Shown here: positions 5,109 to 29,744 of the stretch, piece by piece
How positions within the stretch are numbered: the first letter of the stretch is position 1
How the letters are laid out: each line of letters opens with the position of its first letter
DNA from: Gekko japonicus
Lineage: Eukaryota
Direction: 5' to 3'
Assembly (NCBI RefSeq): GCF_001447785.1
Contig: NW_015168690.1
Location: forward strand, 332,669-396,668
DNA length: 64,000 bases
Notes under the pieces: generated by a model
The model's input: only the letters and a program-made list of their open reading frames with translations
The model's database searches: none
What the model was told of the DNA's origin: nothing
Position numbers and translations under genes: made by a program

Positions 5109-5263
5109 TCAGTCTAAGTCTGATCTTAATGACTTAGAATATATTTTTCTCCTTAATAAGCTGGTTTTGTCAGGATACACAGTGACAGAGCCACATCTGA
5201 ATGGTTCCTTCATCTTGCTTTGGCTACCATCTACGTCTGACAGTTCTCTGGATCTGTATGGTG
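5109..5263 (-). CDS. TPR gene exon 9 with stop (SPYRSRELS...KEPFRCGSV...LRSDLD*)
   Basis: Acceptor ctcctattattag, phase 1 match, TGA at 5111-5109 followed 3 nt later by gtaaat. Confidence 0.75.
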
Positions 5264-8200
5264 CTAATAATAGGAGTAATTGAATTAGAGGGGGAAATGA
5301 CAGTTTTTTTTAATGCATCTGACAAAGTAGGTTTTTGCCTATGGCAGGTCATCTCATAGTTTTTAATATGCCACAGATCTGTGCAGGTATTTTCTAACCT
5401 CCTCCCCCAGTCTTTCTATGCTAGAATCACAGCTCTAGAGGAAGGAAGTATCTTAGAAAAGACAGGTGTTCTCTCTCAGAATGTGCTTCCTAATGAAGAT
5501 AGGAAGCTACTAAATGCCTGAACACTGGTTGGTCATCAGTGAGTAGATATGAAACAATCCTCCACACATGTGAACTTTAAGAATCAGAAGAATTGCACAA
5601 AGGCAGCAGATTCTTGAAATAAGTATAATGTCTGTTTCTGCTCTGAGTAATTAAGTTTTCTGGAAAGCATGCAACAAAAGTTACGCTTTCTGAATTGAAA
5701 TTGCTATGAGCACTGCAAATTAAAGAAGGAGGGTGCATTCTGAACAATTTACTGGCAGATTGCAGGCAATAACAGAAGGAAGCAAACCTTGCATGGGGGA
5801 GGGGGGACAGTTGAATAGAGCAATATGCTTTGTGCTTGGAAATAAAGTGGCTTGTATCCAACAACACAATTCCAAAAAGGATATCTTCTTTGTAAAAAGT
5901 GAGGGTGATTTACACTGATTCCCTCTCCTACTTTGACCCCTGTGCCATTGCAGGAACTGACACTCAGAAACAAAGTCTGCTCTGTGACTGGATCTCATTG
6001 GCTACAAATCAGTGAACTGATTTCTTTAGTAAGTTTCAATCATGCCATATCAACTAAGCAGAAAACTATAAATAAATTAAGTACAAAGACACAGAACAGC
6101 AAAAGCATAAGTTTCACAGACATTCATAGTTCTTACAATAAGATGACTTGGTACGGAATGTTGCTCCAGAAAACAGGTTGGCATCAGTGACAGTGTGAAA
6201 AGCATTTAGACTCCACAGGTATCTATAAAATATTTATCAGAAGAAAATAATTTTAACAGAATGTATGCATTGTGTTATTAATACATGTCTACTTTGACTT
6301 TCCACATTTCCTATTTGGGCAATTGCTTTTAATAGCTTTAGTCACACATCCCAAAAAATGTATCATTTCAGAAGATAAACAGTATTCCTACCCAAACATA
6401 GACAGAAAAAAATCCATAGGTCTGTGTTGTGTCTACAGATTATTCATATCCTACTTTAGCTGCCTTGAAAGTGGATCTAGCACAAAAATCCAACTCATGA
6501 CATGTACCCAAAATAATTCCCTCTGCAATGGCGGAGCTTGAAGATATGTCACTATTAAGACTTTACAAGAGGGGGGCTGTGAGACTCATGAGGGGGATAT
6601 CCCATCTCCCCCCCCCATCGCTGAGCCTGGTGCAGCTCCAGGCTTCACCGCACACCTTGGAGCCTGGCTGCAGTGGTGCTGGTGTCTGGGAGCCACTCTG
6701 AGCCTGGAGCATATCCTGTCGTAGCTGCCACTGCCAGTCCCAGAGCATCTAACAGGGTCTGCTGCCACCATGGCTGGGTATGGAGTGGCTCCTGGCATCT
6801 GCCACAGATGGACCTGGAGCTGCTCCCAGCATCCGCTGCTGCAGTGGATGGGCTCAGAGTGGCTCATTTTGTTTGCTGCTAGCACAGCAGACTCCTGGCA
6901 TTTTTCATTGTCAGTGACTCCTGGTGTCTTTCACCACCAGCTCTCCAGATTTATGGTAAGTGTGTTGTCTGCACGTACAGATGCTACTTTATCGGGGGGG
7001 GGACTTAAACCCCACGTTGTGTGTATTTTTAAGTTTTCAGATTTTTCTGCAAGCCTGGGGAGTCCCCCAAGTTAGCAGAATTGTCTGTTTGTGGTAAGTG
7101 TGGCCCCAATCCACAGATTTAGCTATCCACTGATGGGGGGGCACATTTGAGAAACAGATATATAGATTATGTCCTATTGATTCCTTTGCCGGAGAACGCT
7201 TACCAGCTCAAGGAGAAAAAATAATAGGGCTGGGAGTAGTTGGGAAAGGCAGAGTTTCAGAGAAATCTTATGCTCCTGTGCAGTTCATTCCTTCCCTTAC
7301 AACGGCATAACATTACTTGTGTTAAACAAAGGCACTCACCAGCACACCAGTGGAAAGGATGTTCTTCACCCTGGCAAGTGCCTTTTAACAAAGAAAATTT
7401 CTGCACTGTATTTTTAGATCTTTGCAGCACTACTTTGTAGTTCTGTTTTCAGTACTGAAAAGCAAGTTTGTCTTAATGCTGCAGTTGGCTTTAGGTACCT
7501 TTTCTGCTTCTGTTCCCCTCCTGATAGTTTCTCCCTCAGAAAGGAGTTTGGGAAAGGGGAGAGTAAGGGGTTGGGGTGGGACTGAAACAGAGAGAGAAAG
7601 ACAATTTTTCATTGCTTTTGTGCTATCTAGAAGGTATGAACAAAAAATTACTTCTAAAAACCAAGGCCCTTCCTGCATGGACAACCTATTCCTCATTTTC
7701 TGCACAGTCAATCCTCAAGCCATAGATTTGGCTTGTCAGCATTCTTTCCACACCTTGTTATTGGTGTGTGGTCAGTTTATTTTCTTCCTCATATGCCCCA
7801 AATAATCCAGATTGTCAAGAGAGTCTGCTGTCATCAGCGCTGTCATCATCAGTGACATCACATTGCCACTGTTCCCCCTTTTTTGTGTGTGTGCTACTGC
7901 AATGCATCAATGTAATGCTTAAAAAACAGCCTTCTCCTTATACATTGTGAGGTGATTGAAAAGGGGTCTTCCCACCTTGAATTTTGATTGTCTGGGGTGG
8001 TGGTGGTTGGTTGTATGGTGTGGTGATTCATTGATGTTATTTCTTCGTTCACTTTGGAGAACTGATGTATTGGATTTTGGTTTCATTTTTCCTGAGTGGA
8101 TAAACAATCAGTGTGGTATGGATACGGATACTGATATGGTGGCTTGAGTACTAGTGGTCATGTCTTTATGCTCAGTCTGAGCAGCACTGTCAGTGCTCGC

Positions 8201-11200: not shown

Positions 11201-14200
11201 CAGTATTGCCAGCTGTACAAATAAATGTAATGTGGTGAATTGTAACTGTTCAGCATCAGAGGGTTTTCCTGAAAGGAACTGCAATTGAATGCAATTGAGA
11301 TACAGCACATCAATATAAAAATATGCAAAAAAAAATTAACTTGAACCACACAAATCAACAACTTCCAAAGAAAAGCTGCATTTTGCATGAAAATCTGGCA
11401 TATGAAATATTTTTACAGCATCATATAAATGTAAATGTGATTTTAAAAAATCAGAATTGATGGAATAAAGGGAAAGGTAAGTGGAGGAGGGAAAACACAG
11501 GGGTGCAGTTTCACCCAGAGGAGGGCATTGCTGGGTGGATCCAGATAAACTGAATGCAGCATTTCGCGCACTCAAAGAAGTGATTCAAAATTGGCTTCTT
11601 TTGGGTCCCCACCAAAAAGTGTAAGAAAAATGGGGAAACATCAGAATAAATTCTGGAGGCAGTCCAAAATGTGCAGAAATGACAAAAATGCTGAAGCAAT
11701 ACAGGGCCTGAACCAATGAAAACAACACATGCAGAAAAGGTCTGAAATTAAGATCTGCTACTAATTTCTATTAAAAAGTTTTTCAAACACAGCTGCCAGA
11801 GTTTCAGTGATGTTCAGTCAGATTATATGTATATTTACTTAGAAGTAAGTATAATTCTTATTAGATTGTGCATCGTATGTTACTTGTCAGTGATTGTACA
11901 TCACTTTGCACTGTATTGCCATACTTTTTGGATTTTGCTTTACAATATAACATACCCGGGATCTTCGTTACTGTATAATTCTTATCAGATTGTAGATTGT
12001 ATATTCTTTGTCAGTGATTGTATATCACTTTGTTTGCATTGTATTGCCATACTTTTTGGATTTTGCTGTACAGTATATATTTGAATTTTCTTAGTATAAT
12101 AGATTACAATATTGGTTTAGTGTCTCATTCCACAGCTTTTTTGTTCTCGTTTATGTTACTACTGGGAAGTCTCTTTTTTTGCCTACACTTTCTGAACAGA
12201 AATGGTCATGTACTGTGTCAGTCCTCTGTGTGCTTTCAAATAATTTTCAAGGTACTTATTTTTATTCTTGCAGGTTACAGACCTTCACAACTTAGGCTTT
12301 CATGCCTCAGAGTCTGTCTATAAATGTTTTGGTATTGTTTTTGACTTTTTATTGTTCACTATCCTGAATTTACACAAAAGGTTGGATAATCTCTTAAATA
12401 AATAAATTTGTTATTGTGTTCCTTCTTAAATTAAACCAGCCTGTTTGCCAGAATATGGAACCTCCCTTGCAGTCCACAACACACACCCATTTGCATTCAT
12501 TACCCCTTAAACTGCTTTCTATTTAACATTATTCAGTACTCAGACCATGGAAGATTCCTTACTTCAGCTTTCCTGATTTCTTTGGCAGTTAGCTTGTTGT
12601 TATGAAAAGACGTTTACAAATTTCAGTTCTGCTTGTGTATTTGTGTGCCCCTTCCAAAATTGCTTACACTCTGGGAACACTGATCTTCAAACACAGAGCA
12701 GCCTACTGAAGAAACCAAGTAAAGATAAAACATTTGGACCATCTGAGGGCTTGTGTCAGCCATGTGCCCCTCAGTCTTACAGCAGAGATGCAGATGGAAG
12801 AGGGGCATCTGGGACTGCTTTAAGAGCTGTGGCCTAGGAGATGATAAAGCCTTACCCACAGTGACTGCTGCCTTACTGAGCAAGCTAGACAACTACCTCT
12901 AGTGGCAGGAGGGGGGCTATGTATTCCACAGTTCCTAATGGGATAGCAGTATGCACAGCAGCACCAGGGTTTATTTATCTGTTTATAATATTTCAATGCT
13001 GCTGCTTCAGACTCCTGCTTGAGATGGCTTACAATTAAAATCATCACAGTACAAAAAAAAAGCCATTAAAAACAAGCCATTAGGCATAAGCACCATAAAA
13101 ACTGTCTATAAAACAGAAGCAGACCATTAAAAAACTGATAAGGTAAAACCCCTAATTAAAAGCCTGGGTTAAAAGGATATGTTTTAGCCCAGGGCCTAAA
13201 AAATAATAAAGTAGGCTCCAGGTGGGCCTAAAAAATAATAAAGTAGGCTCCAGGTGAGCCTCAAGGGCATGGGCATTCCAAAGGCAAGGTGCCACTATAG
13301 AAAATGCCCTATCTCAGGTCGCCACCCACCTCACCTCTGAGGGTGAGAGAGCAGGGCTTGAGAGGCAGGGACGGAGAAGGTCCTTCAGAGACCCTGGCCC
13401 CAAGCCATCTAGGGACTTAAAGGCAAGAAGCAGCACTTTGAACTGTGCCTGGAAACAGATGGATAGCCTGAGCAGATCTTTCAGCATAGGAGTGCCATGA
13501 TCGCTTGAGGCCAGGGGTGAGAGACCTTTGGTTAGTTTTGTCCCTGCCCTCAGTCCTCTAGCAACAGCATGAAGAGACACCGTTTGAACCCATCACAGCC
13601 CACTTATTATTGTTACTACTAGTACTAGTGGTGGTGGTGGTGGTAGTAACAGTACACTGTTGCCTACAGTTCTTTGCCAGTAACCACACACACGAATGCC
13701 TGCGCACATGTTATTTCATCGGTTATGTGCCCGTACTACCTTGTTGTTTTTCTTTTCCCCGTGTGTTTTGCTCCCTCTAGTGGTCACTTCGGTCTTTCCT
13801 AGCTATTTCTCAAGGTTTTTTACGGGCACTTTTAAAGGGGGAAAAAGCCAGAGGCAGTACTGGCACACAACCGCCAGAAACTACATGTGTGGGGAAAACC
13901 ACAGATACAAGGGAAATAGCTTGACTTTAATATAGCTATATAATTTTATCCTGGATGCAACATCTGCTCATACTCACCTGTCATAGAAAGATGACATTTT
14001 AGGACTATTAAAATCTTGCACATCAAAGAATTTCTGACTATCCGGGCAGAGACTAAAAGCCTAATGGAAAGCAAAACACTTATATAAGTTCTATATATAA
14101 AACACCTTTGCTGTATTTTAACACCTGTTCTTCATTCTAACGTTGATGTTAAAGAATCCATAGTCTGTTGCTGGCAAACTAGACTCCATTAGACTGAAAG

Positions 14201-17200
14201 CAGGAGGAAAGAAACAGGATAGAGGAAAAAGAAGGGCAAGGGGCTGTAAGAAGAACAGAAAATTAAGGTTTTTGCTTTAAATTCTGCCTTGTGTGGTCTT
14301 CCTGACTGCATCAAGATAAAAAAAATAGTCCATACTGTCAGCATTAGCCTTGCCAACCTCCAGGTGGGGCCTGGAGATCTCCTGGAATTACAACTGGTCT
14401 TCAGACTACAAAGGTCAGATCTCCTGGAGGAGATGGCGGCTTTGGAGGGTGGACTATGGCATTATACCCCTCTGAGGTCTCTCACTTTCCAAGCCCTGCC
14501 CTCCACAGGTTCCACCCCAAAATCTCCAGGAATCTCTAGGGTTGCCAACTCCAGGGTGGGAAAATCCTGTAGATCCCACAACATTCATTTCATCAACCAG
14601 TTCTTCCCTGTTAGTCAGGATTAAATCTAGGATAGCAGATCCTCTGGTTCCCACCTCCACCTTCTGAGAGATGAAGTTGTTTGCAAGACTATTCAAGAAT
14701 CTTCGGGATGCCCCATGCCTAGCAGAGTTAGATTTCCAGCAAATACCTGGATAGTTGAAATCTCCCATAACCACTACATCCTGTCTCTGTGAAAGTTTAG
14801 CAAGCTGTTGTACAAATGTATCATCCAGTTCCTCTGGTTGGTTCGGAGGTCTGTAGTATACCCCCACAACAATATCCCCTTCTCCCCCCCCCATCCTTAC
14901 CCACACACTTTCAACAGGGCAACTCTCAAAATCCTGAATTTCAGTGCAAGAGTATTCATTCTTGACATATAGTGCCACCCCACCTCCTTTTTTGTATATT
15001 CTGTTTCAGTACAATAAAGGAAGCAGTAATGATTTACAAAAATAATACAAACATTTCATAGGCTGACTTATTTATATTTTTCCAATAATTGTTTGAGATA
15101 CAACCAAACTAAGGACATGGAGATACAACCAAACTAAGGATATGTTTAAGTATTGTCTTGATAACAAGGATGTTTGAAGTGGCTATCATAAGCCATAAAC
15201 TTGGGAGTCATTGCTGATTATTTAATTTTCATCACATTGGAAAAGTATCCAACAAAGTGTACCAAGCTGGATAATAAGCCTGTCATGAGGTTACCATTAT
15301 TATCATATCTCATCTGAAACAAAATCTGTGCATTTGCCGTCCCTATGAATATGTGATATATAACATGACAGCAATGGAACTGATTCCTCATCATTCTCTT
15401 AATTGCAAATAAATTATATGATATAATGCAAGCCATTAGAAAGGCTTGCAAGGGCATGGGCCTCATGACCAGACAAACCATAGTTTGTTCATAAATCTAA
15501 CAAGTGTGTGGGAAAGTTCTATTGGCTATTACTCTGATGCTACCCTTACTATACCAGAAGTGCTCTCAAATGATAATCTGTATTCTTGGTTAATAAGATT
15601 CAAAATACGTTAGTGTGCAACAGGTGCTCTTAGCCCTATCCCACATCCCACTAAGTTGTAACTTAGTGACCTCACTGGTTAGATAAATTAGATGGTTTTA
15701 CTGCTGCACAATGCTTGTTCTCCTAAGACATTTACATTTTAGTTGAGGGCAACAATGGGAGGTTAAGACTGGTACCCCCCCTTTCTTTCCTATGGCCCCC
15801 ACGTACCCTGCCCTGCCCTGCCCTGCGGGACAGCAGTGTGACTGGCAAAGGGGGATTATTATATTACTATCTTGGACTGGTTTTAAATTACTGATTTACT
15901 GTTGGCAAGTTTAATTATATATTGATTGTATTTTAAATGTTTTATAAGGCTGTATATCACCCAGAGCATGCTTGCAGGGTGGGCGATTCATAAGTTTAAT
16001 AAAATAAATAAATTAAATAGTAAACACAGCTTTCAAGTCCTGTTCTTTATCCGTTGGCATGAGTGGAATGCAGACTTGAGCATTAGCAATTCTATGAATA
16101 AACCAAAGGCTTTAAATTAATAAAGGCTAGATAAAAAAGGATGTCATAAAACTACATGGGGCTAAATCAGATCTATAATAAACAATCATACTAACAAGGT
16201 CTGTGCCTACCTCCATCAAGACCAGCCCCTTGCTGAGCTTCAGCTGAAAACCCATCATGTATACAATTATGAGATAAGCAAATTAAACGATAGATCTTTC
16301 AGAGCATCATTTACCTTTCTGTGGTCTTTATTGTGCATAGAAGTCACAGCCCCAAGAGAGTTTATAATAGCTCCCCTTAAGATCAAAGTGCAAATATGTG
16401 ATGAATGCAGCCTCAAACTATTGTTTAAATCAGTAAGGGCTCTTCTCTTTTCTTTTGCTGAACCCCAAACAAGAGCTCTGATACAGTACACATCCTGCAA
16501 AAAAGTAAAGCACAGTTAGTAAGTTCAATTTTCTCTAAATGAAAAACAACTGTGGTTTAAATCACCTTTTTTAGTGCAAAATACCCTTTCCTGAGAGCAC
16601 TTTGCAAGGGTCCACTGGCTGATGTTACCCTTTGTGGTTTGAACCTCCATAGAAAAGCAGAACTAAAAAAACCAGGAATTGAAAACTGGAACATGTGTAC
16701 AGTTAAATACTACTCATTAAAAACCTACCTTATACTTATCTTGTTAAGTCTGTGAGCCCTCTTGGAATTTAGAGAACTAAGAATGTAAGATACTACAAAA
16801 TGGCTGCCGTGGGCTGCTGGGACAAGTCACAAAATATTAGGAAGTTGCAAGTAAACATCTTCCTATGATGGAGGCAACTGATTCTGAATGGGTGCTCCTT
16901 GGTTCTTTTGAAGCACCTTCTGCCCCCATGATGTGAAGGAAAGCCAAGATTGGCTCCTGGCTTTGGGGCATAAATGCTTTGTCAAAAAAGCATGTGAGAA
17001 CCAGGAAACACATTAGCAGGTACCACTGAACTCACAGGCACAATGGGCCACCATATTGTCCTACACTCCCCCCTAGATCCAGTTCCCCAACCCTAAGGAG
17101 CAGCTCTTCAAGAACTACAGTAGAGAAAGGAAAGCAAGGAAGATTATTTCTGTGAGTGGATCTCCATTCATAGTTCTTTGGTACTATCCCCATATGGTAA

Positions 17201-20200
17201 AGCACATACATTATGACCTATCTAGTTAGATCACAAAGCATTACTACTCACAGGATTTGAAGGGTCTAACTCCACGGCTTTATTAGCATCAGTTATTGCT
17301 TCTTTAATCTTGTCTAGAAACAATTCAGGAAAGAGCACAATTACAAAGTATTTGATTATTAGCTACATGTAGAACTGAAATATAAAAACACAAAACATAG
17401 CAAACTTTAAAAATACAGAAGTCCCTTCAGCTGCCACAGAGCACTCAGTCAATGTATAAATTTTCCTTAATGCAATACTAAAATAGCATGATGGCAATTT
17501 TATCATTCTAGTAGCTCTATGGCTACAAAATTATTTTTTCTTGTTAAACCTGTAACCAACAATGCCTTGTAGGCCAGCAATGTCTAGGGAGCTCAGACAA
17601 AATTCAAGCACAATTGGGGGGGGGGGCTTTACTGAGTCAACATTCAAAAGCTGAACAGAGGACATAAAACAACCATGGACAGATAAAAAATGGTAAGATC
17701 TTTAAAAATCTATGCCATAATATATCAATTAAAAAGACATGTTCACTGTCCTGAGCCTTAGTTCACCATCAGTAATAATCGCTGTCCATTTAATTGTAAA
17801 TGTGCCTGTGTATTATTCATCCATAATATTCTTGTTCTAGGAATCATTCAGATTAAGATTTATTCAGTCTATGACCAGTACAAATCAAAAGATCAAAGTA
17901 AAGAATAGAAAAGGTCAATCCTGCTAACACAACAGTTGGAATTTACTGAAATTTAAAATCTGTACATCAAATTTCCTGACACATTTTACAAGCTGCTGAA
18001 AAAAATTTTTCACAACTAATAGTAGTCTGTTGATTAACACCCAATAAAAGCTTCTTTGAAATATCAACATCAGAACATCTTGAAAATCTTTTAAGCAATG
18101 GGGAGATTATATTTGAGCTAATTTCCTGATAAAAACAGCAATAAAACAAAATATGCTCAACTGATTCCACCTCTTCAGTACCACAGGGACACATTCTCTC
18201 CTTCATGGGGATCTTTTTGCATCTCCCCTCCAAAACCGAAGAGGGGAGAGTTCACCATCTTGCCAATGTAAAAGCTCTCCATTGGCTAGGTACCTCCAAA
18301 AAGGAGAGATAGGATACTGGAGCATCAATATAATCTACGTTTATTTGAAATAATAAAATTTGGGATTTTGTTATTGTCTATTTGTCACTCTATATCAAAC
18401 AATCTTTGTTTAACCATTGCTTTTGCTTGATCATAACCCCTTTTCCAGAACATTTTCTAAAGAAAATCCTGCAATTTGCAATGTTCTTCACCCAGGAAGA
18501 TTGGTAATGGAGAGCTAAGGGTGTCAGGCCCTTTGGATGATAAGCTAAATTTAGCCAAAAATTGATAGAGGCATAGGGCTGCCAAGTGGGGGCGGGTAAA
18601 CCCCCGCTTTGGAGGCCCGATTTCCGCCACCACGGAATCAGGCCCCGGGGGAACTCCACCCCCCCCGAAGCGCAGCGTGGCTGCATCACCAGCGGTGATG
18701 CAACCACGGCGATCACGTTGGGGGCATGGCCCCGATCGTCAGAGGGAAAACTCTATGGTTTTCCCTCCGATGATCGGGGCCACGCCCTCAACGTGATCGG
18801 CGTTGTGCGTAACTTCTGGTGACGTGCTGGCGGCGCGCGTGTGCACGACGAGGGACAGCTTCCGGAGCGCGGCGAGGCTCCCCCGCTGGTGAGTAAAATT
18901 CACTTGGCAACCCTATAGAGGCAAGACTTACCCTAGCCTCCACCTTAACCAAACCAGAATCAAGATATTAGCTAGCATTGGAAACACAACTGGGTACTTG
19001 GAATAATGTTCCCAGGAATCTTGATTGTTCTAAAGGGATGAAACAAGAGGAGGGAGGTCCAAGTATTGTCTCATACATTAGTTGGGGCAATGTTTTTGGC
19101 TGGAATAGTCAGAGGGCTGCTGATATTAAGAGACCTCCTTTGGTACATGCAAATTTTAAAATACTCTGAGTGGATTGTTGGCCTATTGCTATGACATATT
19201 TATGATGAGCAGTTCTGGTCCCAAATGAATGAATCATCACCCCTAAGTACTTGAAATACAGTACTTGTTCCAACTTATAGCCATTGATGTTCCAAGACCT
19301 TTTTTTCCGACTTTTGCTGAAGGATATGATTTTAGTTTTCTGATAACTAATCTCTAATCGGCTCTCTTTGAAATAACACTTAAATTCCTTAAGCACTCTT
19401 TTCAAACCCACTGGGGTTCTAGAGAGTAGTACCATATCATTGGCAAATAGCAACGCCGGGATTTTCCTGTTTACTAAAATAGGGGAGTGGATATCAATGT
19501 TACCTTTGTTACTTGCCAAATTATTAACATATAGGTTAAACAACACTGGTGCCAGGATGAAGCCTTGTTTTACTCCTTTTGCTGCTATTACTGAATTAGA
19601 AAGGTGTCCAGCCCTGTTGCATCTAACTTTGAGGGATGTATTCGAATATATGGCTCATATTATATATAAGAGTCTACGATCTATATTCATGGCTTTAAGT
19701 TTCTCCCATAGCAATCCCCTAAATATAAAGTCGAAGGCAGATCTCAGGTCAAAAAAGGCAGCATATAATCTACTAGTCAAAATTTCTCAGATGTTGCATA
19801 ATTAGACAATGACCCAAAGTAGATTTGCCCTCCCTAAAGCTTGCTTGTTCTATAACAAAGATATCTTCTTGTTCAATCCAGCATTTAAGTCTATCTAGCA
19901 ATTGACTAGCACTGGGGGCGGATCAGGCCCCTGGAAGGCTTCTATCAGGCCCACAGTGGAACTGGCTGTCTCCTGCTTCTTCTTCCACTTCTGCTGCTGC
20001 TGCGCCATCGTAGGTTTGCAGCTTACAGATACACACCTGAACAGCATACTGAAGACTGCAAGAGCACAGACATTTTGATGCAATATTTCAGAGCAAGAGG
20101 TATCAGTTATCAGACACTGTTAAATAAAATATTGCAAGAGTACTAATGTTCTAAGCATGCTATTATTTTAAGTAAAAAAAAGACCCTTTGTGTTTGTGTC

Positions 20201-23200
20201 CTTTATAAAGTTTATATCTCCGCTACCTGGCATTACATTTTATGACACACATGGCCCGGCCCAACAAGGTCTTATTTATGTCAGATTTGGCCCTCATAAC
20301 AAATGGGTTTGACACCCCTGGACTAGCATATGGTTTACTTATAATGCTGAGCAAGCTAATAGGTCTATAATTGGCTGGATGATCAATGGACATATGCAAA
20401 TGTGAGGCAGAGCACCCTAATTACACCCAAGGGTTATCATGAATAATAGTAGGTGTGCTCTGGCTTGCAGGTGTTCATAATTAGGCCTCCTCATAGACAC
20501 TATTCTTTTAAGGCTGGATTCAAGAATGTGTAAATTGGCTTAGTCTGGAAACCTGCACTCAGTTCAGTAACCAGATGGGAGGGGGGAACCAGGAGCTAAT
20601 GTCACCATCTTCTAGAGGGTTCCAGTAAGAAGCGACCTGATTGGATTCAAAGGACCACCTGACAGCAGAGACAAGAGACTATAATTAAGCCTTAGACAAG
20701 AAGGAAGCCAAGCTAACTTTATTATGCCATGAGACAGTGGCTCTGACAATGATAAGCTTCATTGCAATGGATTGCTATGTAGAAGATGCGTAAGCTTCTG
20801 GCCTGGACTCTGATATTCTGAATGGTGTTAGCTAGAAAGGGTTAGATAGAAAAGTTAGCCTTTGTTATTATTTTTTGCTAGTGAATTCTAGAGACTGTGT
20901 TGCCTACTGATAATCCTTTAAAAAATCATTCAATAAACTTATATGTATATTTTTTCAAAGGTTTGGTTTTTTGTTTGTGTGCACTTAACCTCAGGGACCC
21001 ACAAATCTGAGCACTGCTTGTTTGCCCAAGAGGCAGTGACTCAGAGGGACCCAGGCTTGGGTTCCTGACAGAAAACATGCCTGTGTTACATATTTTCATG
21101 TCATCCGTTTCAGTGCAAACTCAAGGTAACAGCGCTAGTTTGACCAAGTCCGTTGGGACATTTGAAACAGGCAAAAAATATGTTAAAGTTGCCAGTTTAC
21201 ACTGAAACTGCTCAAGAAACAACCTATAAATTGAATGCCCAGATAGACACAGAAAGGGGTTTCCATTCATCATAGTCTGTTCAACCGGTGGGACTGGGAA
21301 AATGTTCTACTGTTTATCTATTTATTTACTTCATTTTTCATTCACCTCTTTCTCATCGAGACTGCCAAGGCAGATCACAGAATTATAACAAAATAAAATG
21401 AAGACCAGCATCATACATAAACAATGCAATACTACTGAGTTACACAATTAAAGAACAACATATTAGAAGTATAATACATCCAAGAAACTGGATTTCAGAA
21501 TCAGAGAACAGTGAAAAAAGGACAGTAAAATAATCCATTGAAGAATGCAGTATGAAGGAAGAGGAAGGGGGGGGGAAACTGCCTAAAATATTCACTGTCA
21601 AACAAAATTACAATTATATTGCTTCTATAAAAGTGCCCTCCTGCACAGTTCCATTTTATCACATGGAATTGGCTTTGCAGACCTGCACACATTCATTTTT
21701 ATCTAATCAGGCAAGAGCATTTTCTTCCTGTACAAGTAGGTGAGGAATCAAGCGATTAACTTAAGAGTGTACACACACTGCTATTATCTTGCATCTTAAT
21801 CTAGTGGTTATGATAAAATAAAAATTTACCATGGAGGGGAGTTGTGTGTGTTTTTAAATTATTATTATTTTTAAGTAAAGTGCCTATAAAGATGTGGACA
21901 CTAGATTCAGTACTTCCTTAGCAAATATAGTGCCTGTCTTTAAAGGAAATTCATTCTCTTTTTTCATTGGACAAGAGGGATCACTTCACTTCCTATGTCT
22001 TTTTCAGTCTGAAAAGCACTAACGAAAGTCACTAATGTAATTAACACCGAACTGAGAAAGAATGTGTCTAACTGTGGGTCAAACGTGGCAACTCATCCCA
22101 AAAGCACCATAAAATATTGGTGTATTCTCACGTGATTTTAGCCATGGATTGACTTGAAGAAGCTTTCCTGTGACAAAGGATCACAACACACAGCATCCCC
22201 TAATGTTTCCAGCTATTTCATAATAATGCCAATGCTTAATATTTAAATGTTCTTTTTTGCATTCCTAGACCACTATATGTAATGAATTTAGCTACAGAAG
22301 CCACTTAACTTACCACATTTCACATAAGCATAAGCTCTCCTTGCAAGCACAGGTGTATGAAAGAAAGATCTGGAAACACAGCCAACTTGACAGGCATACT
22401 GGAGAGAAGAGGATACCATTGTGAACTGCAGTGCTGTGATAGTTAATTCAGCTTTACAGTACACTTCACCCAGTTATGCCATCTGAACACTACCATTGTG
22501 AATATAATGGAGTTCTTGAGCCATTCACATTAGCTTCATTGCTCTTTTATTTATTTCAAACTACTGGTCTTATTTACCTCAGCAGGGTTCTATAAGATTA
22601 CTCCCCAGACTGTTCAAAGCCCTATGGGGATGATTAATGTCATCATTCCAGTGTAATGTTTCCCATAATTGTACTGAGTTTTAAAAACATTAGGACCCAA
22701 GGGGCTAGACAAGGAACTATAACATTAGCAGCGAGCTCATATAAATCAATTTACTCCCTTGCAGAGAAGAAAGAACGAAGAAGGAATTTAATGAGATTGT
22801 GCAGGGACTACAAAGGCACTACACACTCATCATAACCAACACTTAATCTGAAGCACAAATTTATCATAGAAATAAATTTTGAAAACAAAAGAGGGCACCA
22901 ATTGATTTTTCCATAACTTTATGCAAACAAAGAGGGAGTGACTTTTGAGATACTGTTAAGTATTTGAGGTATTTACATTTCAATCTCCTCATAAATTTTA
23001 TTGTTGCTTTAACTGCTTTTTACTGTTTTTATTTTTCTTGAATTTATGAAGCTATTATTTTCCCTTAACATAAAATCCATCTGCAAAGATCATTTAAAAA
23101 TGCAAACATAGCGTTTCCTGTGACCTTGCACAACATTTACGTCAGCTTTAGATTTTTTTAGAGAGAGAGTGTGTGTACGCAGGAACACCAGTAATCATTT

Positions 23201-26200
23201 TAAATCTCAGTGTTATCCACTTATTTTCATGTACAAGAGAAGATGCACACACATTATCATGCTGTTCTCCATGTGNNNNNNNNNNNNNNNNNNNNNNNNN
23301 NNNNNNNNNNCAAATCAACTGACACATTCTGAAGTCCAGTTAATGTCAATGGCAAAGTTAAACATATGTTCAAATCTTTTCCATTAAAATCAATCAAGGA
23401 CCTCGTGGCTGAATTGTGATCCTATTAATGATAGACAAAGCAGTAAAGTCCATACATATGAATTGATCCAATAAAGTATAGGTATAACAGAGAAGTCTTC
23501 AATTTACATTGCATGTCGCATAGGAAAGAAGTCTTAAGTCTTCAAGTCACATGTAGCATATAGCAACTAGCACATAGAGAAATCAAACAATATACGTTCA
23601 GCAGAGAAGACTTCAATTGCATGTAGCATATAAACGAAGAATCCAGATATTATAAACTTTTTTTCGTTGAACTTCCTCAATAATGGCAATGACTAAACAT
23701 AAAGAACAATATTAAGAATCCAGTTTTGAATAACTGGAAAACTACAAAAGTTATACAAAGCTTCAAAAACATACCTAATGTAATTTATACACAAAATTGA
23801 TTGCATCAGCTTCTAAAGTCATTCGCAAAGACAGTGTTTCCTATGAGGGAAAAAACACAGGTAACCAATCTCCTAATATATTACTGCCTTCATGTAGCGG
23901 TGAGGCATTCTGAATTATCACTAAAGTTGCTATTATCTTTATTAACTTACCAAAAGGTCCTTGTTGGCCCCAGTCACACAGGAGGTTTTGCCCTGCAAGA
24001 GGGACGGATCGGGGCGCATCAAACGGGCGCAATCACACCACAACATCTGGGAAGCAGAGCGCACCTGTCCCCGATCCATCCTTTCCAGGGGAAAACGCGC
24101 AGCAAAAAAGAACCTAGAAAAAGAGTACTACCTACCTGAAACTCCGCAGCAAGGGTGGCCATGGGATCGCCGGCGCACCCGTCTCCCGCAGCATTCGAGG
24201 CTCCCGGCCAAACTGTGCATGTGCACACATGCGCAGCCGGCTGCCTCGCTCCTCGTTCCGTGGCTCCCCCCCCCCGGCATCTGATTGTGCCGGGGAGCAA
24301 CTGAGCTGCGGCTCGGGGGATCTGTCTGATCCCGCCACGCGTCTATTTTGATGCAGCTCAGAAAAGCCGCACTTTGGCCATGCCTCCCCCCCCCCGTGTG
24401 ACCAGGGCCGTTGTGGCTGAGTCCTCTGCCTCAGTAGTGTTGAAGTCAGAAGAGTTTCTATGGTTATCAGCCCACGTAACGTTTTTCTGTAAATTATCAT
24501 TGGGAGTGCACCATTTGTACACCTTATTAAGTTCATAATCTTTTTTATCCCTTTGATTTTTTTTATTTTTTCTCTATAGTATTTTTTTCAAAAGCTTTAA
24601 GCATCTCCTTTGTTATGTCTCCTTTAAATGCCTGCAGCAGGTGTGTGCTCCATTAGGGATAGTTTCTCCCTTTCTTTGTATATAGTGGTCCTTTCAACCT
24701 TCTTGTTTAGAGGCAGAACCACAAGCTCCACTTAAAGAATAGGACTGGTTGCCCATTAATACAAGGACCTTTTGGTAAGTTAATAAAGATAATAGCAACT
24801 TTAGTGATAATTCAGCATGCCTCACCGCTACATGAAGGCAGTAATATATTAAGAGATTGGTTACATGTGTTTTTTTACTTATAGGAAACACTGTCTTTGC
24901 GAATGACTTCAGAAGCTGATGCAATCAATTTTGTGTATAAATTACATTAGGTATGTTTTTGAAGCTTTGTATAACTTTTGTAGTTTTCCAATTATTCAAA
25001 ACTGGATTCTTAATATTGTTCTTTATGTTTAGTCATTGCCATTACTGAGGAAGTTCAACGAAACAAAGTTTATAATATCTGGATTCTTCGTTTATATGCT
25101 ACATGCAATTGAAGACTTCTCTGCTGAACTTATATTATTTGAAGACTTAAGACTTCTTTCCTATGCGATATTGCAATGTAAATTGAAGACTTCTCTTATA
25201 CTTTATTGGATCAATTCATACGTATGAACTTTACTGCTTTGTCTATCATTAATAGTGAGTGGGCAACAATGTGGCCAATGAAGTTCAGTGATGGTAAGTG
25301 TAAGGTGGTGTACATTGGGACAATGTGGGACAAAAAATCCCAACTTTAAGGAAATGCTAATGGGGTCTGAACTTGCTGAGACTGGAAGGGAAAAAGATCT
25401 TGGGGTCGTAGTGAATAGTTCAATTAAAGTGTCAACCCAGTGTGCTGCAGTGGTGAAAAAGGCAAACTCTATGTTAGGAATGATTAGGAAAGGGATTGAG
25501 AATAAAATGGCCGATATTGTAACACCCTTGTGTGGACTCATTTGGAATACTGTGTTCAGTTCTGGTCACCATATTTCAAAAATAGCCATTGCCAAGCTGG
25601 AACAAGTACAGAGGAGGGCTATAAAGATGACTAGGGGGTTGGAGCACCTTCTGTATGAGGAAAGACTGAAGAGTCTGGGACTTTTCAGTTTAGAAAAAAG
25701 ACAACCCCATGATAGAGGTTTATACAATTAGGCATGGGGTTGAGAGAGAGTTGACAAAGATAATTTTTTCTCCTGCTCCCAAAATACTGGAACTCAAGAG
25801 TATCCAATGAAACTGATTGGCAGTAGGTTCAGGGTGGATAAAAGGAAATACTACTTTACTTTACACAGAGAGTGATTCACATATGGAATTTGCTGCCAGA
25901 GGATGTAGTAATGGCCACAGGAATAAACAGCTTTAAAAGGGGATTAGATAGATTCATGGAGGATAAGTCTATCTATGGCTACTAGCCATGGTAACTGAGG
26001 GGAACCTCAACATTTAGAGGCATTAAGCCTCTGAATCCCAGAGCCAGGAAGCAACATCAGGGGAAGGCCTTGACTTCTATGCCATCCAAAGGAACTGTTT
26101 GGCCACTGTGTGAGACAGGATGCTGGACTAGATGGACCACTGGTCTGATCCAGCAGTGCTCTTCTTATGTTCTTATGTTCTTAAAAGGCATTTCATATTG

Positions 26201-29200
26201 GAAATATAGTAACCTCCACCACCACCCCAAAAAAAACCCAAAACTGGAGGCAGGGGATTATTACTCCAAATTCTCCTCTCTCATTTTTCAATTTTTTTCT
26301 AATTTTATTATAATTTACAGCGCAATTCATAAGCCTGTATTAGGGCATTTATAGCAATCTGCATTCATTATATAATATACCCTAATATTTTGGAGGGAAA
26401 GATACTTCAGTGGTTGTTATTGGGGACAAGTATGCAAACATCAAAGTATTTATTTTAATGGTCTTGTCTCAATGTGATATATATTACAACTCCTAGTCTA
26501 ATGTTACTGATAAGAATTTTTAAAACCATTATAACACCTATTGTTATAATGCTATAGCAATATATTGATAGTCATTGCCTTTTTTTTAAAAAAAGCCCCC
26601 TTGTGGCATGGGGAAGAAATTGCTGCTGTGGGGAAAATGGCTGCGGCGGGGGGGGGGGGATCCCAATTTTCCAACCCATGTGGCAGCCATCCAGGCTTTG
26701 GCATCTTTCAAAGCAAAGCAGGTTTGGGAAAGTTCAGGAAAAGCCAAGTAACCTGGAATGTGTATGTTGGAAAACGGGGGGGGGGGGATGCTTCCCCAAA
26801 GCATCAAACCCAGGGCAAATAACCTGTGTGGAAATGTCCAGTACATCTTATAATGGATTTATTTTACTTACTAAACATCCCTAAAGGTAGAAATTCCATG
26901 AATAAAAGGGCTTGGATTCTATGTAGAATTTCTGCAGGCATAAGGCTGAGGCAATTTTCACCAATTTCCCCCTCCCTGTGGCAGCCCAACATGCCCCCTG
27001 AAATACCACTTCTGAGGGACAGAAGAACCCTAGGAATAGAATTGGGGAATCAGAGGTCTTCTATTGGAGGGGGAAATCAATAAATCACCAGGATCAAAGC
27101 CAAGATTTCTTTTTCTGTACAAAACAAAATTGTGTTATGTAGATAGTAAAATTATGGTGATGCTTCCATACCTTAGGTACCTGGGCAACTTCAATTGCAT
27201 TACTAAACTCTTCTACAGCATCACGGTGTAAATCTAGTTTTTGAAATGCTATACCAAGATGATAACAGGTTTCAAACAGCTGAAATTTTTAAAAAAGATA
27301 TAAAATTATTTGAGTAGGACTAAGGCTATAAATATGCTTAGCTCTTGTAATTACCCATTGTAATTAAAACCAAATCCTGAGATTATTTGCATGGCTCATT
27401 TGAAGATAATGTTATGGCTGTCAGCTGATTGGCTGATGTTTAATCAGTGAGACGGTGGGGATATTGTTTTCTGCTTGTCTGAATGACATCACAGAGAAAG
27501 TGAAAGAGGCCTAACTGAGGACAGGGGACAAGTGTGTGTATGTAGCATTAGCAGAGGCAGGGGCTCAGTTCAAACACAACGTAAAACTATAATTTATTTT
27601 AACTGCAGTTGGTTTGTGAAGACAGGATTCTGCTCACAGTGAATCAGTCAATCCTGGTTTGAAATGCCTTGGGTATGTGGGATCTCTATATACTTTTTGG
27701 TCTTTTTTCAGTGTGTGTGTTTGTGCGCGCACATGCACACGCACACACACACACACCCGACCATGCCTGGAAGTCACGGCAACCTCTGGCAACTCTTACT
27801 GGGGCACGGAGGACATTCAGAGAAGAGTCCATCTGGCCTCACAGCTCTGATATTCTCTGGAGGTCTCCCATCCAAATATATGTCAGGGTCGGCCCTGCTT
27901 AGCTTCCAAGATCTGACGAGATCAGGCTTACCTGGGCTATCCAGGTCAGGGCTACTTTTTGGTCTTGATCTACAAATACATACAGCTGGATAAGAAGTTG
28001 AGATGCTATACTGAAATTACCAGCTGTGTATAGAGAGGGCCTGGAACATATTCTTCAGGAAGCTTATCTTTGCTCAGGACTTTCAGCAGTTGTTGGTAAT
28101 ATTCAACAGCCTGAAAACAAATATTAAAATAGTAGAAGAATCTGAGCTAGAATCAACATGTTCAACATGCTGTATGGTCGTAAGCAGATTTCCAATTAAG
28201 AAATGAAAAACAAGGAAGATCAATTTTTTTGCAAAATATATAATTAGTCTAAATACCAGTTAAGAACAGAAATATAAATATGAAGAAAAGGAAGAATAAA
28301 CCCACCTTTTCCAGTTCTTCCCATGTTTTAACACACCATTTATGTGAAACACACAGGAATGAAATTCTAGACGTAATATACATATCTCAGATTTCCTGTT
28401 GCCTAAACAATGAGTCTAGAACAGGGATGTCAAACATAAGGGCCGGGGACCAGAACCGGCCCATGTAGGGCTCTTATGTGGCCCGCGAGCAACTGGTGCA
28501 AGGGAGGGGGTGCTGGGGGGGGGGAGTGGGCAGAGCCACTCCATTGTGGCTTCAGCATGTCAGAACAAATTTGTTTGCAGCAGTCAAGCATCGTGGGAGC
28601 ATCTGCCCAGCTCTTAACTGTTGCCTCTCCAGTCCGCCTATGTGGGGTTTTCTCTGCACCCACCTCCCAGCCCATGGGGCCTTGCAGTGAGGATACAACA
28701 ACTCAGAGCTTACCAGCTGCTGTCCTTTATACAGTTTCTATCTCCGGTACCTGGCATTACGTTTTATGGGCCATTATTATAAATTATGGCACACATGGCC
28801 CGGCCTGACAAAGTGACATTTATGTCAGATCTGGCCCTCATAACAAATGGGTTTGACACTTCTGGTCTAGAACATCTTTCTTGCTTGGAATAAGCAACTT
28901 TGTTTTCCTCGGTCTGTGAACCTTATCTCATCTTTTGAGGCTACTTGATTTTTCTGTTCATCACACTAAGTGCCTTTGGGTTGAAAGGCAGCATGCTAAT
29001 GTTCCAAATAAATACATGTTTGTGATGCTATTTGCATTTGAATGTCTTTAGCAATTGCACAACAGGCAGAAACGCAGGTGGTGAAGTCTTCCCCTGTTTG
29101 GGGCTATAGTAATAGAGGAGAATCACCTGCTGCATTGCTACCCATTGCAAAACTGGCAAAGTGCCAAGTGGCCGTCACAAAACACTGACACTCCTAAGCA

Positions 29201-29744
29201 GAATCCTGCTTGCCATCCACAGGCTGGTTTAGCTTTAGTTTAAGGACAGTCGGCTGAACCATAGTAGACTATGAAGAGGGGTGGATGACACCCTTGCAAG
29301 GCACGAATTCCACAGGAGTCTCTTGTTACAAAAATGAACTAGAATCTTTGGGCACTTTAAATACTAACAGACTCTTATGCGGACTGCCAAATCCTGCCAA
29401 ACTCCTTAACCAGGGACAATTTCCCGCGCGCCATTCCAACCACCCTGCCTTCTGGCACAGGAGCCAGGGAGGGAGCCAATTACCTCACGCCAGCGCATGG
29501 CCCGCTCGCAGCTCAGCGCCAAGAGGAGAGATGCTTGAGCCTGCGTCTGGGCGCGGGCTACTGCGTTCATGAAGGCTGGCGAGACCGTCTTTCTGCGCCG
29601 CGTCTCATCTTTGGTGGGCTGCGGAGGACCGGAGGAGGCGGAGAGACGCTTGGCCGGGGTGCTGGCCAAGGAAGGAGGCGGGTCCTGGGAAAATGGCTGA
29701 GGCCGAGACATGAAGCGCCCGCTGGAGTGCTCCGACAGCGACAT
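5109..29744 (-). CDS. Uncharacterised TPR-repeat protein gene, 9 coding exons, ~369 aa (gene span)
   Basis: join(complement 29484-29744, 28021-28110, 27172-27279, 22314-22398, 17252-17313, 16315-16494, 13978-14060, 6137-6222, 5109-5263). All introns GT-AG, phases 0,0,0,1,0,0,2,1 consistent, no internal stop. TPR-like helices: [80 protein letters not shown]. Start codon choice uncertain (29744, 29711 or 29570). Confidence 0.88.
6137..6222 (-). CDS. TPR gene exon 8 ([28 protein letters not shown])
   Basis: Acceptor atattttatag, donor gtaaga, 86 nt (phase 2 to 1). Confidence 0.82.
8340..9417 (+). pseudogene. Harbinger DDE transposase remnant with an intron (8719-8867)
   Basis: [36 protein letters not shown]; [15 protein letters not shown] (from GAIDGTHIPI); [12 protein letters not shown]; ACIILHNLC; frameshifts and stops. 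Confidence 0.85.
9800..11270 (-). pseudogene. Probable Harbinger second (Myb/SANT-like) gene remnant
   Basis: Position convergent to the transposase inside the TIRs; [18 protein letters not shown] resembles the IA..L...G..RT..QCR.KF helix; splice sites at 10856, 10772/10680 and 10106. Confidence 0.45.
10187..10392 (+). mobile_element. hAT MITE (CAGTGTTCCCTCTAAG family) nested in Harbinger
   Basis: TIRs; perfect 8-bp TSD CTTATAGC; second copy at 31367-31572. Confidence 0.9.
12965..13500 (-). mobile_element. L2 LINE 3' end fragment with 33-bp tandem duplication
   Basis: ORF 13314..13580 [37 protein letters not shown] is an L2 ORF2 C-terminus; duplication at ~13191-13256. Confidence 0.75.
13978..14060 (-). 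CDS. TPR gene exon 7 ([28 protein letters not shown])
   Basis: Acceptor ttgctttccattag, donor CAG|gtgagt, 83 nt (phase 0 to 2). Confidence 0.88.
14345..14550 (+). mobile_element. Gecko-type hAT-derived MITE (GGGTTGCCAACCTCCAGGT family)
   Basis: Related copies at ~845-1005, 44583-44721, 45920-46126, 46362-46579, 51445-51617 and 59458-59701. Confidence 0.7.
14570..15000 (-). mobile_element. CR1 LINE endonuclease fragment
   Basis: [40 protein letters not shown]. Confidence 0.9.
16315..16494 (-). CDS. TPR gene exon 6 ([10 protein letters not shown]...HNKDHRK)
   Basis: Acceptor ttttttgcag, donor AAG|gtaaat, 180 nt; lies in ORF 16267..16500(-). Confidence 0.92.
17252..17313 (-). CDS. TPR gene exon 5 ([21 protein letters not shown])
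   Basis: Acceptor tgtttctag, donor gtgagt, 62 nt (phase 1 to 0); classic TPR helix B EA..DA.KA.ELDP. Confidence 0.92.
17850..19900 (-). mobile_element. RTE-X-like LINE (RT and C-terminal Cys/His motif)
   Basis: [22 protein letters not shown] (YADD-equivalent), FKYLGV; [19 protein letters not shown]. Confidence 0.75.
18574..18915 (+). mobile_element. Young CpG-rich hAT MITE nested in the LINE
   Basis: TIRs TAGGGCTGCCAAGTG / CACTTGGCAACCCTA; perfect 8-bp TSD TAGAGGCA. Confidence 0.92.
19912..20320 (+). mobile_element. hAT-Charlie-like MITE
   Basis: TSD GACTAGCA on both sides; 3' end tttgacacccctg; similar to 28422-28864. Confidence 0.75.
22314..22398 (-). CDS. TPR gene exon 4 ([28 protein letters not shown])
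   Basis: Acceptor cttctctccag, donor GTG|gtaagt, 85 nt (phase 0 to 1). Confidence 0.9.
23422..25255 (-). mobile_element. Penelope-like element remnant with inverted pseudo-LTRs
   Basis: Inverted arms 23422-23964 and 24761-25255; spacer encodes [12 protein letters not shown] on minus strand; CTGAGGA..GAAAC hammerhead-like core at ~25045-25064. Confidence 0.65.
23966..24409 (+). mobile_element. PIF/Harbinger-type MITE
   Basis: GGCCCCAGTCACAC / GTGTGACCAGGGCC TIRs, 3-bp TSD GTT; inverted relative at 39604-40048. Confidence 0.8.
25256..26184 (+). mobile_element. CR1 LINE 3' end
   Basis: EKDLGVVV..., [30 protein letters not shown]; (TTCTTATG)n tail. Confidence 0.92.
27172..27279 (-). CDS. TPR gene exon 3 ([36 protein letters not shown])
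   Basis: Acceptor aatttcag, donor AAG|gtatgg, 108 nt, canonical TPR pattern Y-x-L-G...A...F..A. Confidence 0.92.
27762..27952 (-). mobile_element. 5S rRNA-derived SINE
   Basis: Minus strand cctgatctcgtcagatcttggaagctaagcagggc...ttggatgggagacc matches the 5S internal control region, followed by a non-5S tail. Confidence 0.8.
28021..28110 (-). CDS. TPR gene exon 2 ([30 protein letters not shown])
   Basis: Acceptor ttgttttcag, donor gtaatt, 90 nt, open in phase 0. Confidence 0.9.
28422..28864 (+). mobile_element. hAT-Charlie-like MITE
   Basis: CAGGGATGTCAAAC...GTTTGACACTTCTG; perfect TSD GTCTAGAA. Confidence 0.9.

What the first reader, a model, noticed from the sequence alone, without database searches (positions are those of the whole stretch)
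5109..29744. Hidden 9-exon gene for an unnamed TPR-repeat protein downstream of LSMEM1
Seen: nine exons (62-261 nt) joined by GT-AG introns with matching phases give an uninterrupted ~369-aa ORF. It has a disordered Ser/Pro/basic N-terminus, about 4-5 TPR-like helical hairpins, and a C-terminal region (FYDRYLWSLN, KEPFRCG). Only exons 1 and 6 appear in the ORF track. Known (recalled): in human the order is IFRD1-LSMEM1-TMEM168 with no such protein gene after LSMEM1. Inference: an ancient vertebrate gene kept in squamates and lost or unannotated in mammals, with no described function.
Basis: partly seen in the sequence, partly recalled or inferred. Interest (0 to 1): 0.85.

Follow-up and report, generated by a model that had tools for sequence, protein, structure and literature searches.

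The report
Unnamed ancient TPR-repeat gene, nine exons
The nine-exon gene is real and intact, and it is the gecko copy of an old animal gene for a helical-repeat (TPR) protein that databases list in about 80 species only as "uncharacterized" and that nobody has studied.

Summary
On the minus strand, nine exons (29744-5109) joined by eight GT-AG introns with matching phases give 1110 nt, which is 369 codons plus a stop. The assembly gap (23276-23310) lies inside intron 3, and orthologues run without a break across the exon 3/4 join.

Each exon matches orthologous proteins collinearly. The window keeps 10 of 10 invariant and 48 of 48 near-invariant family residues. A CpG island covers exon 1.

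The closest relatives are RefSeq gecko models (Heteronotia about 83%, Paroedura 79%). They have the same start (MSLSE) and the same end (RSDLD).

It occurs in molluscs, an annelid, a brachiopod, hemichordates, amphioxus, coelacanth, amphibians, turtles, crocodilians, squamates, marsupials and a tree shrew. Canids carry truncated remnants. No bird, teleost, arthropod, nematode or primate member appeared. Every member is called "uncharacterized".

The fold is a five-hairpin TPR solenoid. It lacks the Hsp70/90 carboxylate clamp.

The gene is therefore not hidden, because relatives are annotated, and it is not lost from all mammals. It is unnamed and unstudied. Read evidence, dN/dS and LSMEM1 synteny could not be obtained.

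The parts
29484..29744 (-). Exon 1 (261 nt, 87 codons). The ATG is at 29744-29742 with G at -3. It encodes a Ser/Pro/basic disordered N-terminus followed by the start of the first long helix. The donor is GAG|gtaatt.
   Evidence: It is 55/87 identical to Paroedura P0191, which starts with the same MSLSE.
29400..30200 (.). CpG island (GC 0.52-0.69, CpG o/e 0.57-0.96) covering exon 1 and about 450 bp upstream. Presumed promoter.
   Evidence: Flanking 200-bp windows have CpG o/e of 0.1-0.3.
28021..28110 (-). Exon 2 (90 nt, phase 0-0).
   Evidence: 28/30 identical to P0191.
27172..27279 (-). Exon 3 (108 nt). It encodes the first canonical TPR. There is an alternative in-frame donor 9 nt upstream, at 27181.
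   Evidence: (TPR_1 E=0.0012). The conserved I/VPK, with near-invariant K153, supports the donor at 27172.
23276..23310 (.). Assembly gap (N), inside intron 3. No coding consequence was detected.
   Evidence: Orthologues are contiguous across the E3/E4 join.
22314..22398 (-). Exon 4 (85 nt, ends in phase 1). It encodes the conserved CxVGC loop and helix A of TPR2.
   Evidence: 24/28 identical to P0191.
17252..17313 (-). Exon 5 (62 nt). It encodes helix B of TPR2.
   Evidence: (TPR_1 E=0.0011).
16315..16494 (-). Exon 6 (180 nt, 60 codons). It encodes TPR3, TPR4 helix A and the most conserved block, D-V-Y-C-x-R-A-L.
   Evidence: 52/60 identical to P0191.
13978..14060 (-). Exon 7 (83 nt, ends in phase 2).
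   Evidence: 26/27 identical to P0191.
6137..6222 (-). Exon 8 (86 nt). It encodes the family-specific cap motif [10 protein letters not shown].
5109..5263 (-). Exon 9 (155 nt). It encodes the PFRCG...RRKxY tail motif and ends with the stop TGA at 5111-5109.
   Evidence: The C-terminus ...RSDLD is the same as in Heteronotia P0192.

Best explanation
This is an intact, spliced protein-coding gene. It is the gecko orthologue of a single-copy, unnamed TPR-protein family that goes back to the bilaterian ancestor. By inference from the fold, the product is a soluble, non-enzymatic adaptor. It has a disordered Ser/Pro/basic N-terminal tail and a rigid right-handed solenoid of five helical hairpins. 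A family-specific loop (C-x-V-G-C ... H-T-P) sits between repeats 1 and 2, and the solenoid is closed by a family-specific cap (F-Y-D-x-F/Y-L-W-S-L-N-x-x-H-T). A flexible tail with a short conserved motif (P-F-R/K-C-G ... R-R-x-x-Y) follows. The likeliest mode of action is to bind a segment of a partner protein on the concave face of the solenoid. It is not an Hsp70/Hsp90 EEVD-binding co-chaperone, because the clamp residues are replaced, one of them by an invariant Asp. Shown here: the gene structure, the orthology, the conservation and the fold. Inferred: scaffold function. Unknown: partner, tissue and process.
For: Gene structure. Orthology: E6 hits orthologues at 43-80% identity. All nine exons give collinear tblastn HSPs that end at splice sites. 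The window is 79% identical to Paroedura P0191 over 359 aligned residues and about 83% identical to Heteronotia. Constraint: 10 of 10 invariant and 48 of 48 near-invariant family columns are kept, and the core exons are 81-96% identical against 63-67% for the tails. A CpG island is kept at exon 1. Vertical descent: the ML tree of 41 members follows the species tree, with geckos basal in squamates, turtles with alligator, Tupaia with marsupials, and monophyletic amphibians and invertebrate clades; 27 of 38 branches are strongly supported. Fold: the AF2 model of P0191 has pLDDT above 90 over about residues 55-310 and five hairpins. Foldseek and VIA-align place it among TPR superhelices, with Z up to 17.4. 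The orthologue passes the Pfam TPR_1 threshold at 53.8 bits against a cut-off of 27.8. Clamp test: in the HMMER alignment to the SPAG1 TPR domains, the clamp Asn aligns to the family's conserved Arg, the clamp Lys to the invariant Asp203, and the clamp Arg to Ile/Val.
Against: There is no transcript evidence for this genome. There is no dN/dS, because orthologue DNA could not be fetched. The fold and the Pfam membership were shown on the gecko orthologue. The window's joined product was deliberately not assembled, and single exons score below the Pfam cut-off. 'Scaffold' is a generic inference from the fold, and no partner is known. The N-terminal 66 residues are poorly conserved, and the Heteronotia models start at a later Met, so the true start could be internal.
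Confidence: 0.85

Rival explanations
1. The locus is a recently inactivated or silent gene in this species, a young pseudogene whose frame has not yet decayed.
For: No read evidence could be obtained. The family has been lost or has decayed in other lineages, as the canid remnants show.
Against: The frame is open over 369 codons. All 16 splice dinucleotides are canonical. Every one of the 58 conserved family residues is kept. The CpG island is retained at exon 1. Two other geckos have RefSeq models with the same ends.
Confidence: 0.05
2. It is an Hsp70/Hsp90 co-chaperone of the SPAG1/RPAP3/PP5/HOP type and docks on the EEVD tails of chaperones.
For: The best natural matches to the family profile among solved structures are SPAG1 (E=2e-9), TOM70, PP5, SGT1, RPAP3, STI1 and SGTA. 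HOP TPR1 superposes at rmsd 1.3 over 115 residues.
Against: The carboxylate-clamp positions of TPR2 and TPR3 that align are replaced by Arg, by the invariant Asp and by Ile/Val. By eye, the TPR1 K..GN positions read E..YH. Structural matches to non-chaperone TPRs (MamA, LGN, KLC, OGT) score higher.
Confidence: 0.07
3. It is a diverged orthologue or close paralogue of a named vertebrate TTC gene (TTC32, TTC34, TTC16 or TTC6) and so only appears to be unnamed.
For: The ESM Atlas feature search ranks TTC32, TTC34, TTC16 and TTC6 clusters at 0.94-0.95, just below the family's own cluster.
Against: Those rows share 153-168 features, below the 170 typical of the same family. None of these named proteins appeared in four sequence searches. 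RefSeq gives every member, in more than 60 species, a LOC identifier rather than a name transferred from human. The tree behaves as one orthogroup.
Confidence: 0.05

Closest known systems
RefSeq 'uncharacterized protein' models in geckos: Paroedura picta LOC143837945 (P0191) and Heteronotia binoei LOC132576086 (P0192/P0195)
   Same: The exon-by-exon sequence is 79-83% identical. The start (MSLSE, Paroedura) and the C-terminus (...RSDLD, Heteronotia) are the same, and so are the conserved core and motifs.
   Different: They come from different species. The window's own protein is not in the collections searched, so this genome's copy seems to be unannotated there. The Heteronotia models start at an internal Met.
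The wider unnamed orthogroup (for example Alligator LOC102571303, Anolis carolinensis LOC103278911, Sarcophilus LOC111721113, Tupaia LOC102481111, Branchiostoma LOC118415362, Lingula LOC106150993, Crassostrea LOC111105852)
   Same: The TPR core, the CxVGC loop, the DVYCxRAL block and the FYDxFLWSLNxPHT cap are shared. The family is single-copy and inherited vertically.
   Different: Invertebrates, amphioxus and amphibians are about 100-150 aa longer and end in a strongly conserved P-R-M-Y-Y-K-P-W-x-G-D-K-L-P motif. Amniote models lack that motif, and it is not encoded anywhere in the window.
Three-TPR peptide-binding modules of Hsp70/Hsp90 co-chaperones (SPAG1 TPR3, PP5, HOP TPR1, RPAP3, SGTA)
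   Same: They are the best natural sequence matches among solved structures, and the repeat geometry is the same.
   Different: The two-carboxylate clamp is not conserved. This protein has five hairpins plus its own cap and loop. It has no catalytic or second domain.
Generic TPR superhelices (consensus CTPR, MamA, OGT N-terminal domain, LGN, kinesin light chain)
   Same: The fold is the same: Foldseek E=4e-6 to 1e-4 and VIA-align Z 15-17 over about 170-195 residues.
   Different: Sequence identity is only 12-21%. There is no evidence of a shared function or of family membership beyond the TPR clan.

Membership tests
TPR repeat proteins (Pfam TPR_1 PF00515, TPR clan) | The sequence matches the 34-residue TPR profile above Pfam's gathering score. 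| tested here: inconclusive
   The window was searched exon by exon. E3 scored 19.1 bits and E5 19.2 bits against a cut-off of 27.8. The repeats are split by introns and the joined product was not built. The 79%-identical gecko orthologue P0191 scores 53.8 bits and passes.
TPR repeat proteins (Pfam TPR_1 PF00515, TPR clan) | Three or more tandem helix-turn-helix repeats pack into a right-handed superhelix. | tested here: met
   The AF2 model of orthologue P0191 has five hairpins with core pLDDT above 90. It matches TPR superhelices by Foldseek and VIA-align. This was shown on the orthologue, not on the window's own chain.
Unnamed bilaterian 'LOC' TPR orthogroup | Homology is collinear over the whole length, and the conserved residues and motifs (CxVGC loop, DVYCxRAL, FYDxF/YLWSLN cap) are kept. 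| tested here: met
   All nine exons are hit collinearly. 10 of 10 invariant and 48 of 48 near-invariant columns are kept.
Unnamed bilaterian 'LOC' TPR orthogroup | The relationship is orthologous (single copy, gene tree follows the species tree, closest to geckos). | tested here: met
   The tree of 41 members follows the species tree. The window's exons are closest to the two gecko members.
Hsp70/Hsp90 co-chaperone TPR domains | The two-carboxylate clamp (Lys/Asn in TPR1, Asn in TPR2, Lys and Arg in TPR3) that holds the EEVD carboxylates is present. | tested here: not met
   In the profile alignment to three SPAG1 TPR domains, the clamp Asn aligns to Arg, the clamp Lys to the invariant Asp, and the clamp Arg to Ile/Val.
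Named vertebrate TTC genes (TTC32/TTC34/TTC16/TTC6) | There is specific sequence homology beyond the generic TPR signal. | tested here: inconclusive
   The only link is language-model feature similarity of 0.94-0.95 with fewer than 170 shared features. These genes never appeared in the sequence searches.

The most novel reading that the evidence does not exclude
This is a single-copy TPR protein conserved from molluscs and annelids to marsupials, with no orthologue in any classical model organism (human, mouse, chicken, zebrafish, fly, worm). That would explain why it has never been named or studied. It was lost independently in birds and, piecemeal, in most placental mammals: it looks intact in the tree shrew and is decaying in canids. 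Amniotes also shed an ancestral C-terminal P-R-M-Y-Y-K-P-W-x-G-D-K-L-P docking motif. If true, it marks an unknown and repeatedly dispensable cellular module.
Probability: 0.5. Interest if true: 0.5.

Novelty: new member of a known kind. Interest (0 to 1): 0.35.

Why it matters
For this genome it adds a correct nine-exon gene model that seems to be missing from the protein collections. More broadly, it points to a well-conserved, single-copy bilaterian TPR protein that is unnamed in about 80 species and that did not turn up in the usual model organisms in these searches. Its patchy loss gives a natural experiment for working out what it does: no birds were seen, canid copies are decaying, and the tree shrew and marsupials are intact. 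Xenopus-like frogs, anoles, opossum, amphioxus and oysters are tractable systems that still carry it. It is not a surprise of kind, because TPR adaptors are common and RefSeq already predicts these genes.

Tried and rejected
1. RNA read evidence. The look-up of sequencing runs gave three raw RNA-seq runs of the same species label (X10-X12). Three later local scripts loaded the window file; one search ran a regex over the whole window's translation, those places included. They printed nothing from those places.

Exons were searched singly by reference, and the gecko orthologue P0191 served as the proxy for Pfam, the fold and the Atlas.

4. Single exons against Pfam and PDB sequences gave only sub-threshold TPR hits or nothing.

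5. A candidate exon at 22166-22131 was rejected. It is 36 nt, has no homology and is not needed for the frame.

6. The top multi-repeat HMMER hits (P0001, P0003 and others) are generic microbial TPR proteins that score by repeat number, not relatives.

7. I tested whether the ancestral C-terminal motif docks onto the solenoid. In the amphioxus model the tail has pLDDT of about 31-41, so there is no support.

8. Literature. Twelve LOC identifiers and two topic searches found nothing relevant.

9. The search of earlier findings, by place and by words, returned nothing.

Full report
**The observation**

The gene lies on the minus strand. I read each candidate exon and its borders directly and checked the borders by script.

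| Exon | Coordinates | Length (nt) |
|---|---|---|
| E1 | 29744-29484 | 261 |
| E2 | 28110-28021 | 90 |
| E3 | 27279-27172 | 108 |
| E4 | 22398-22314 | 85 |
| E5 | 17313-17252 | 62 |
| E6 | 16494-16315 | 180 |
| E7 | 14060-13978 | 83 |
| E8 | 6222-6137 | 86 |
| E9 | 5263-5109 | 155 |

- The total is 1110 nt, which is 369 codons plus TGA.
- All eight introns begin with GT and end with AG, behind pyrimidine-rich tracts.
- The three codons split by introns read D, R and S.
- Intron lengths run from 741 to 7755 nt.
- The first in-frame ATG is at 29744, with G at -3.

**The assembly gap**

The program's note asked for this to be tested first. The gap at 23276-23310 lies inside intron 3 (27171-22399). 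Gecko orthologues read straight from the last residues of E3 (...V/I-P-K) into the first of E4 (Y-A/I-C-Q-V-G-C), with nothing missing. No coding sequence is lost in the gap, and the frame does not depend on it.

Exons were searched one by one, by reference.
- Where a whole chain was needed (Pfam, AlphaFold, Atlas), I used the RefSeq protein of the gecko Paroedura picta (P0191). It is 79% identical to the window's exons over 359 aligned residues.

**It is a real gene**

- E6 alone (60 aa), run with HMMER against 1.84 billion representative proteins, found a set of single-stretch hits of 43-80% identity and lengths of about 340-510 aa.
- tblastn of seven of these against the window hit the exons collinearly, all nine between them, and the HSP ends sit at the predicted splice sites.
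- In an alignment of 32 family members, 10 columns are invariant and 48 nearly so. The window keeps all 58.
- Against Paroedura, the core exons are 81-96% identical and the two tails 63-67%. That is the pattern expected under purifying selection on the folded part.
- Exon 1 sits in a CpG island: GC up to 0.69 and CpG o/e up to 0.96, against 0.1-0.3 in the flanks. This argues for a live promoter.
- The conserved I/V-P-K, with K nearly invariant, picks the donor at 27172 over the in-frame alternative at 27181.

**Who else has it**

I ran three word-index searches seeded from turtle, from invertebrate and amphibian members, and from mammals. I also ran cluster look-ups. Together they give about 80 homologues:

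- many squamates, including two geckos, plus turtles and crocodilians
- six marsupials
- the tree shrew Tupaia chinensis (288 aa, core intact)
- many frogs, a caecilian and the coelacanth
- three amphioxus species and two hemichordates
- the brachiopod Lingula and the annelid Owenia
- many gastropods and bivalves

Canis aureus and Vulpes lagopus have only short models. These keep the equivalents of exons 6-7 and carry changes at two otherwise invariant Asp positions, so they look like decaying remnants.

No bird, teleost, arthropod, nematode or primate member appeared. That is suggestive but not proof, because two of the searches scored only the 8000 best candidates.

No member has a gene name. 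Nearly all are called 'uncharacterized' or 'hypothetical'; one is labelled merely 'tpr repeat' and one 'Hypp3038'. Twelve of the locus identifiers occur in no paper of the library.

A maximum-likelihood tree of 41 members follows the species tree closely. This is therefore one orthologous, vertically inherited, single-copy family of bilaterian age. The window's exons are nearest to Heteronotia binoei (about 83%) and Paroedura picta, so the genome is a gecko's.

The Paroedura model starts with the same MSLSE, and the Heteronotia model ends with the same ...RSDLD.

**What the protein looks like**

- P0191 passes Pfam TPR_1 at 53.8 bits against a cut-off of 27.8. Single exons of the window do not pass, because introns split the repeats.
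- The AlphaFold model built on the 32-sequence alignment has mean pLDDT 79.6 and pTM 0.72. The core, about residues 55-310, is mostly above 90.
- The model has a long first hairpin, four further helix pairs and a short capping helix.
- A low-confidence loop between repeats 1 and 2 carries the conserved C-x-V-G-C.
- Both termini are disordered.
- Foldseek and an independent all-against-all structural search return only TPR superhelices: consensus TPRs, MamA, OGT, LGN, kinesin light chain and APC subunits, with Z up to 17.4 and many ties. The fold is certain but says nothing specific about function.

**The closest mechanistic class, and the test it fails**

By sequence profile, the nearest natural solved proteins are SPAG1, TOM70, PP5, SGT1, RPAP3, STI1 and SGTA. 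These are the Hsp70/Hsp90 co-chaperone TPR modules. They are defined by a two-carboxylate clamp.

In the HMMER alignment to the three SPAG1 TPR domains:

- the clamp Asn aligns to the family's conserved Arg
- the clamp Lys aligns to the invariant Asp
- the clamp Arg aligns to Ile/Val

The family therefore does not qualify as an EEVD-binding co-chaperone. The charge reversal suggests a different ligand, possibly a basic one. That last point is inference.

**An ancestral feature lost in amniotes**

Invertebrate, amphioxus and amphibian members end in a strikingly conserved P-R-M-Y-Y-K-P-W-x-G-D-K-L-P motif.

- Amniote models lack it, and no such peptide is encoded anywhere in the window.
- In an AlphaFold model of the amphioxus protein, this tail stays at pLDDT of about 31-41. 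There is no sign that it folds back onto the solenoid.
- It is more likely a free docking motif for a partner.

**Most likely mechanism**

The product is most likely a soluble, non-catalytic adaptor that holds a segment of a partner protein on the concave face of a five-repeat TPR solenoid, with flexible tails carrying short motifs.

- Shown: gene, orthology, conservation, fold and absence of the chaperone clamp.
- Inferred: scaffold role.
- Unknown: partner, tissue and process.

**What could not be done**

There is therefore no junction-read evidence. Three later local scripts loaded the window file; one search scanned its whole translation, those places included. They printed nothing from those places.
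- None of the nine runs that hold part of the stretch is on record as RNA. Three raw RNA-seq runs with the same species label remain to be laid.
That ruled out dN/dS and any check of the neighbours in other genomes.

**Verdict**

- It overstates the gene's hiddenness, because RefSeq predicts it in dozens of species, including geckos.
- It overstates its absence from mammals, because it is present in marsupials and a tree shrew and survives as remnants in canids.
- It understates its age, which is bilaterian.

This is a new member of a known kind. Its modest wider interest is as a conserved protein that did not turn up in any classical model organism in these searches.

Noticed in passing
window 23583-23964 and 24761-25142 (intron 3): There are two 382-nt arms, 97% complementary, in inverted orientation and 796 nt apart. 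They begin about 270 nt from the assembly gap at 23276-23310. This may be a foldback or transposon structure, or a local assembly artefact.
   Followed up: partly
window 19112-19546 (-), 14457-14978 (-), 9076-9414 (+): The introns hold decayed mobile-element pieces: a reverse-transcriptase fragment (RVT_1, E=1.6e-7) in intron 4, a LINE endonuclease fragment (Exo_endo_phos_2, E=4.5e-10) in intron 6, and a Harbinger-type DDE_Tnp_4 transposase fragment (E=4e-6) in intron 7.
   Followed up: partly
window 27181 versus 27172 (exon 3 donors): There are two in-frame GT donors 9 nt apart (CAG|gtacct and AAG|gtatgg). Using the upstream one would drop V-P-K. Conservation favours 27172, but alternative use is possible.
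   Followed up: partly
P0220/P0031/P0028 (Canis aureus LOC144288551), P0027 (Vulpes lagopus), P0242 (Tupaia chinensis LOC102481111): Placental mammals differ. The tree shrew model keeps the whole conserved core. The canid models keep only the exon 6-7 equivalents, with substitutions at invariant Asp positions, and look like transcribed remnants annotated as proteins.
   Followed up: partly
P0229, P0264, P0260, P0127, P0092, P0210 (C-termini): The motif P-R-M-Y-Y-K-P-W-x-G-D-K-L-P at the extreme C-terminus is nearly identical from bivalves and annelids to amphioxus and frogs. It is absent from all amniote models and from the window.
   Followed up: partly
window 29400-30200: A CpG island extends about 450 bp upstream of the start codon. 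A 147-codon open frame runs on the opposite strand (29710-30153). It has no homology evidence and may be chance, or may hint at a bidirectional promoter.
   Followed up: no
window 183-283, 41379-41424, 44411-44582: There are three further assembly gaps outside the gene. The one at 44411-44582 sits in a low-complexity, Glu/Arg/Lys-rich open frame.
   Followed up: no
   Followed up: no
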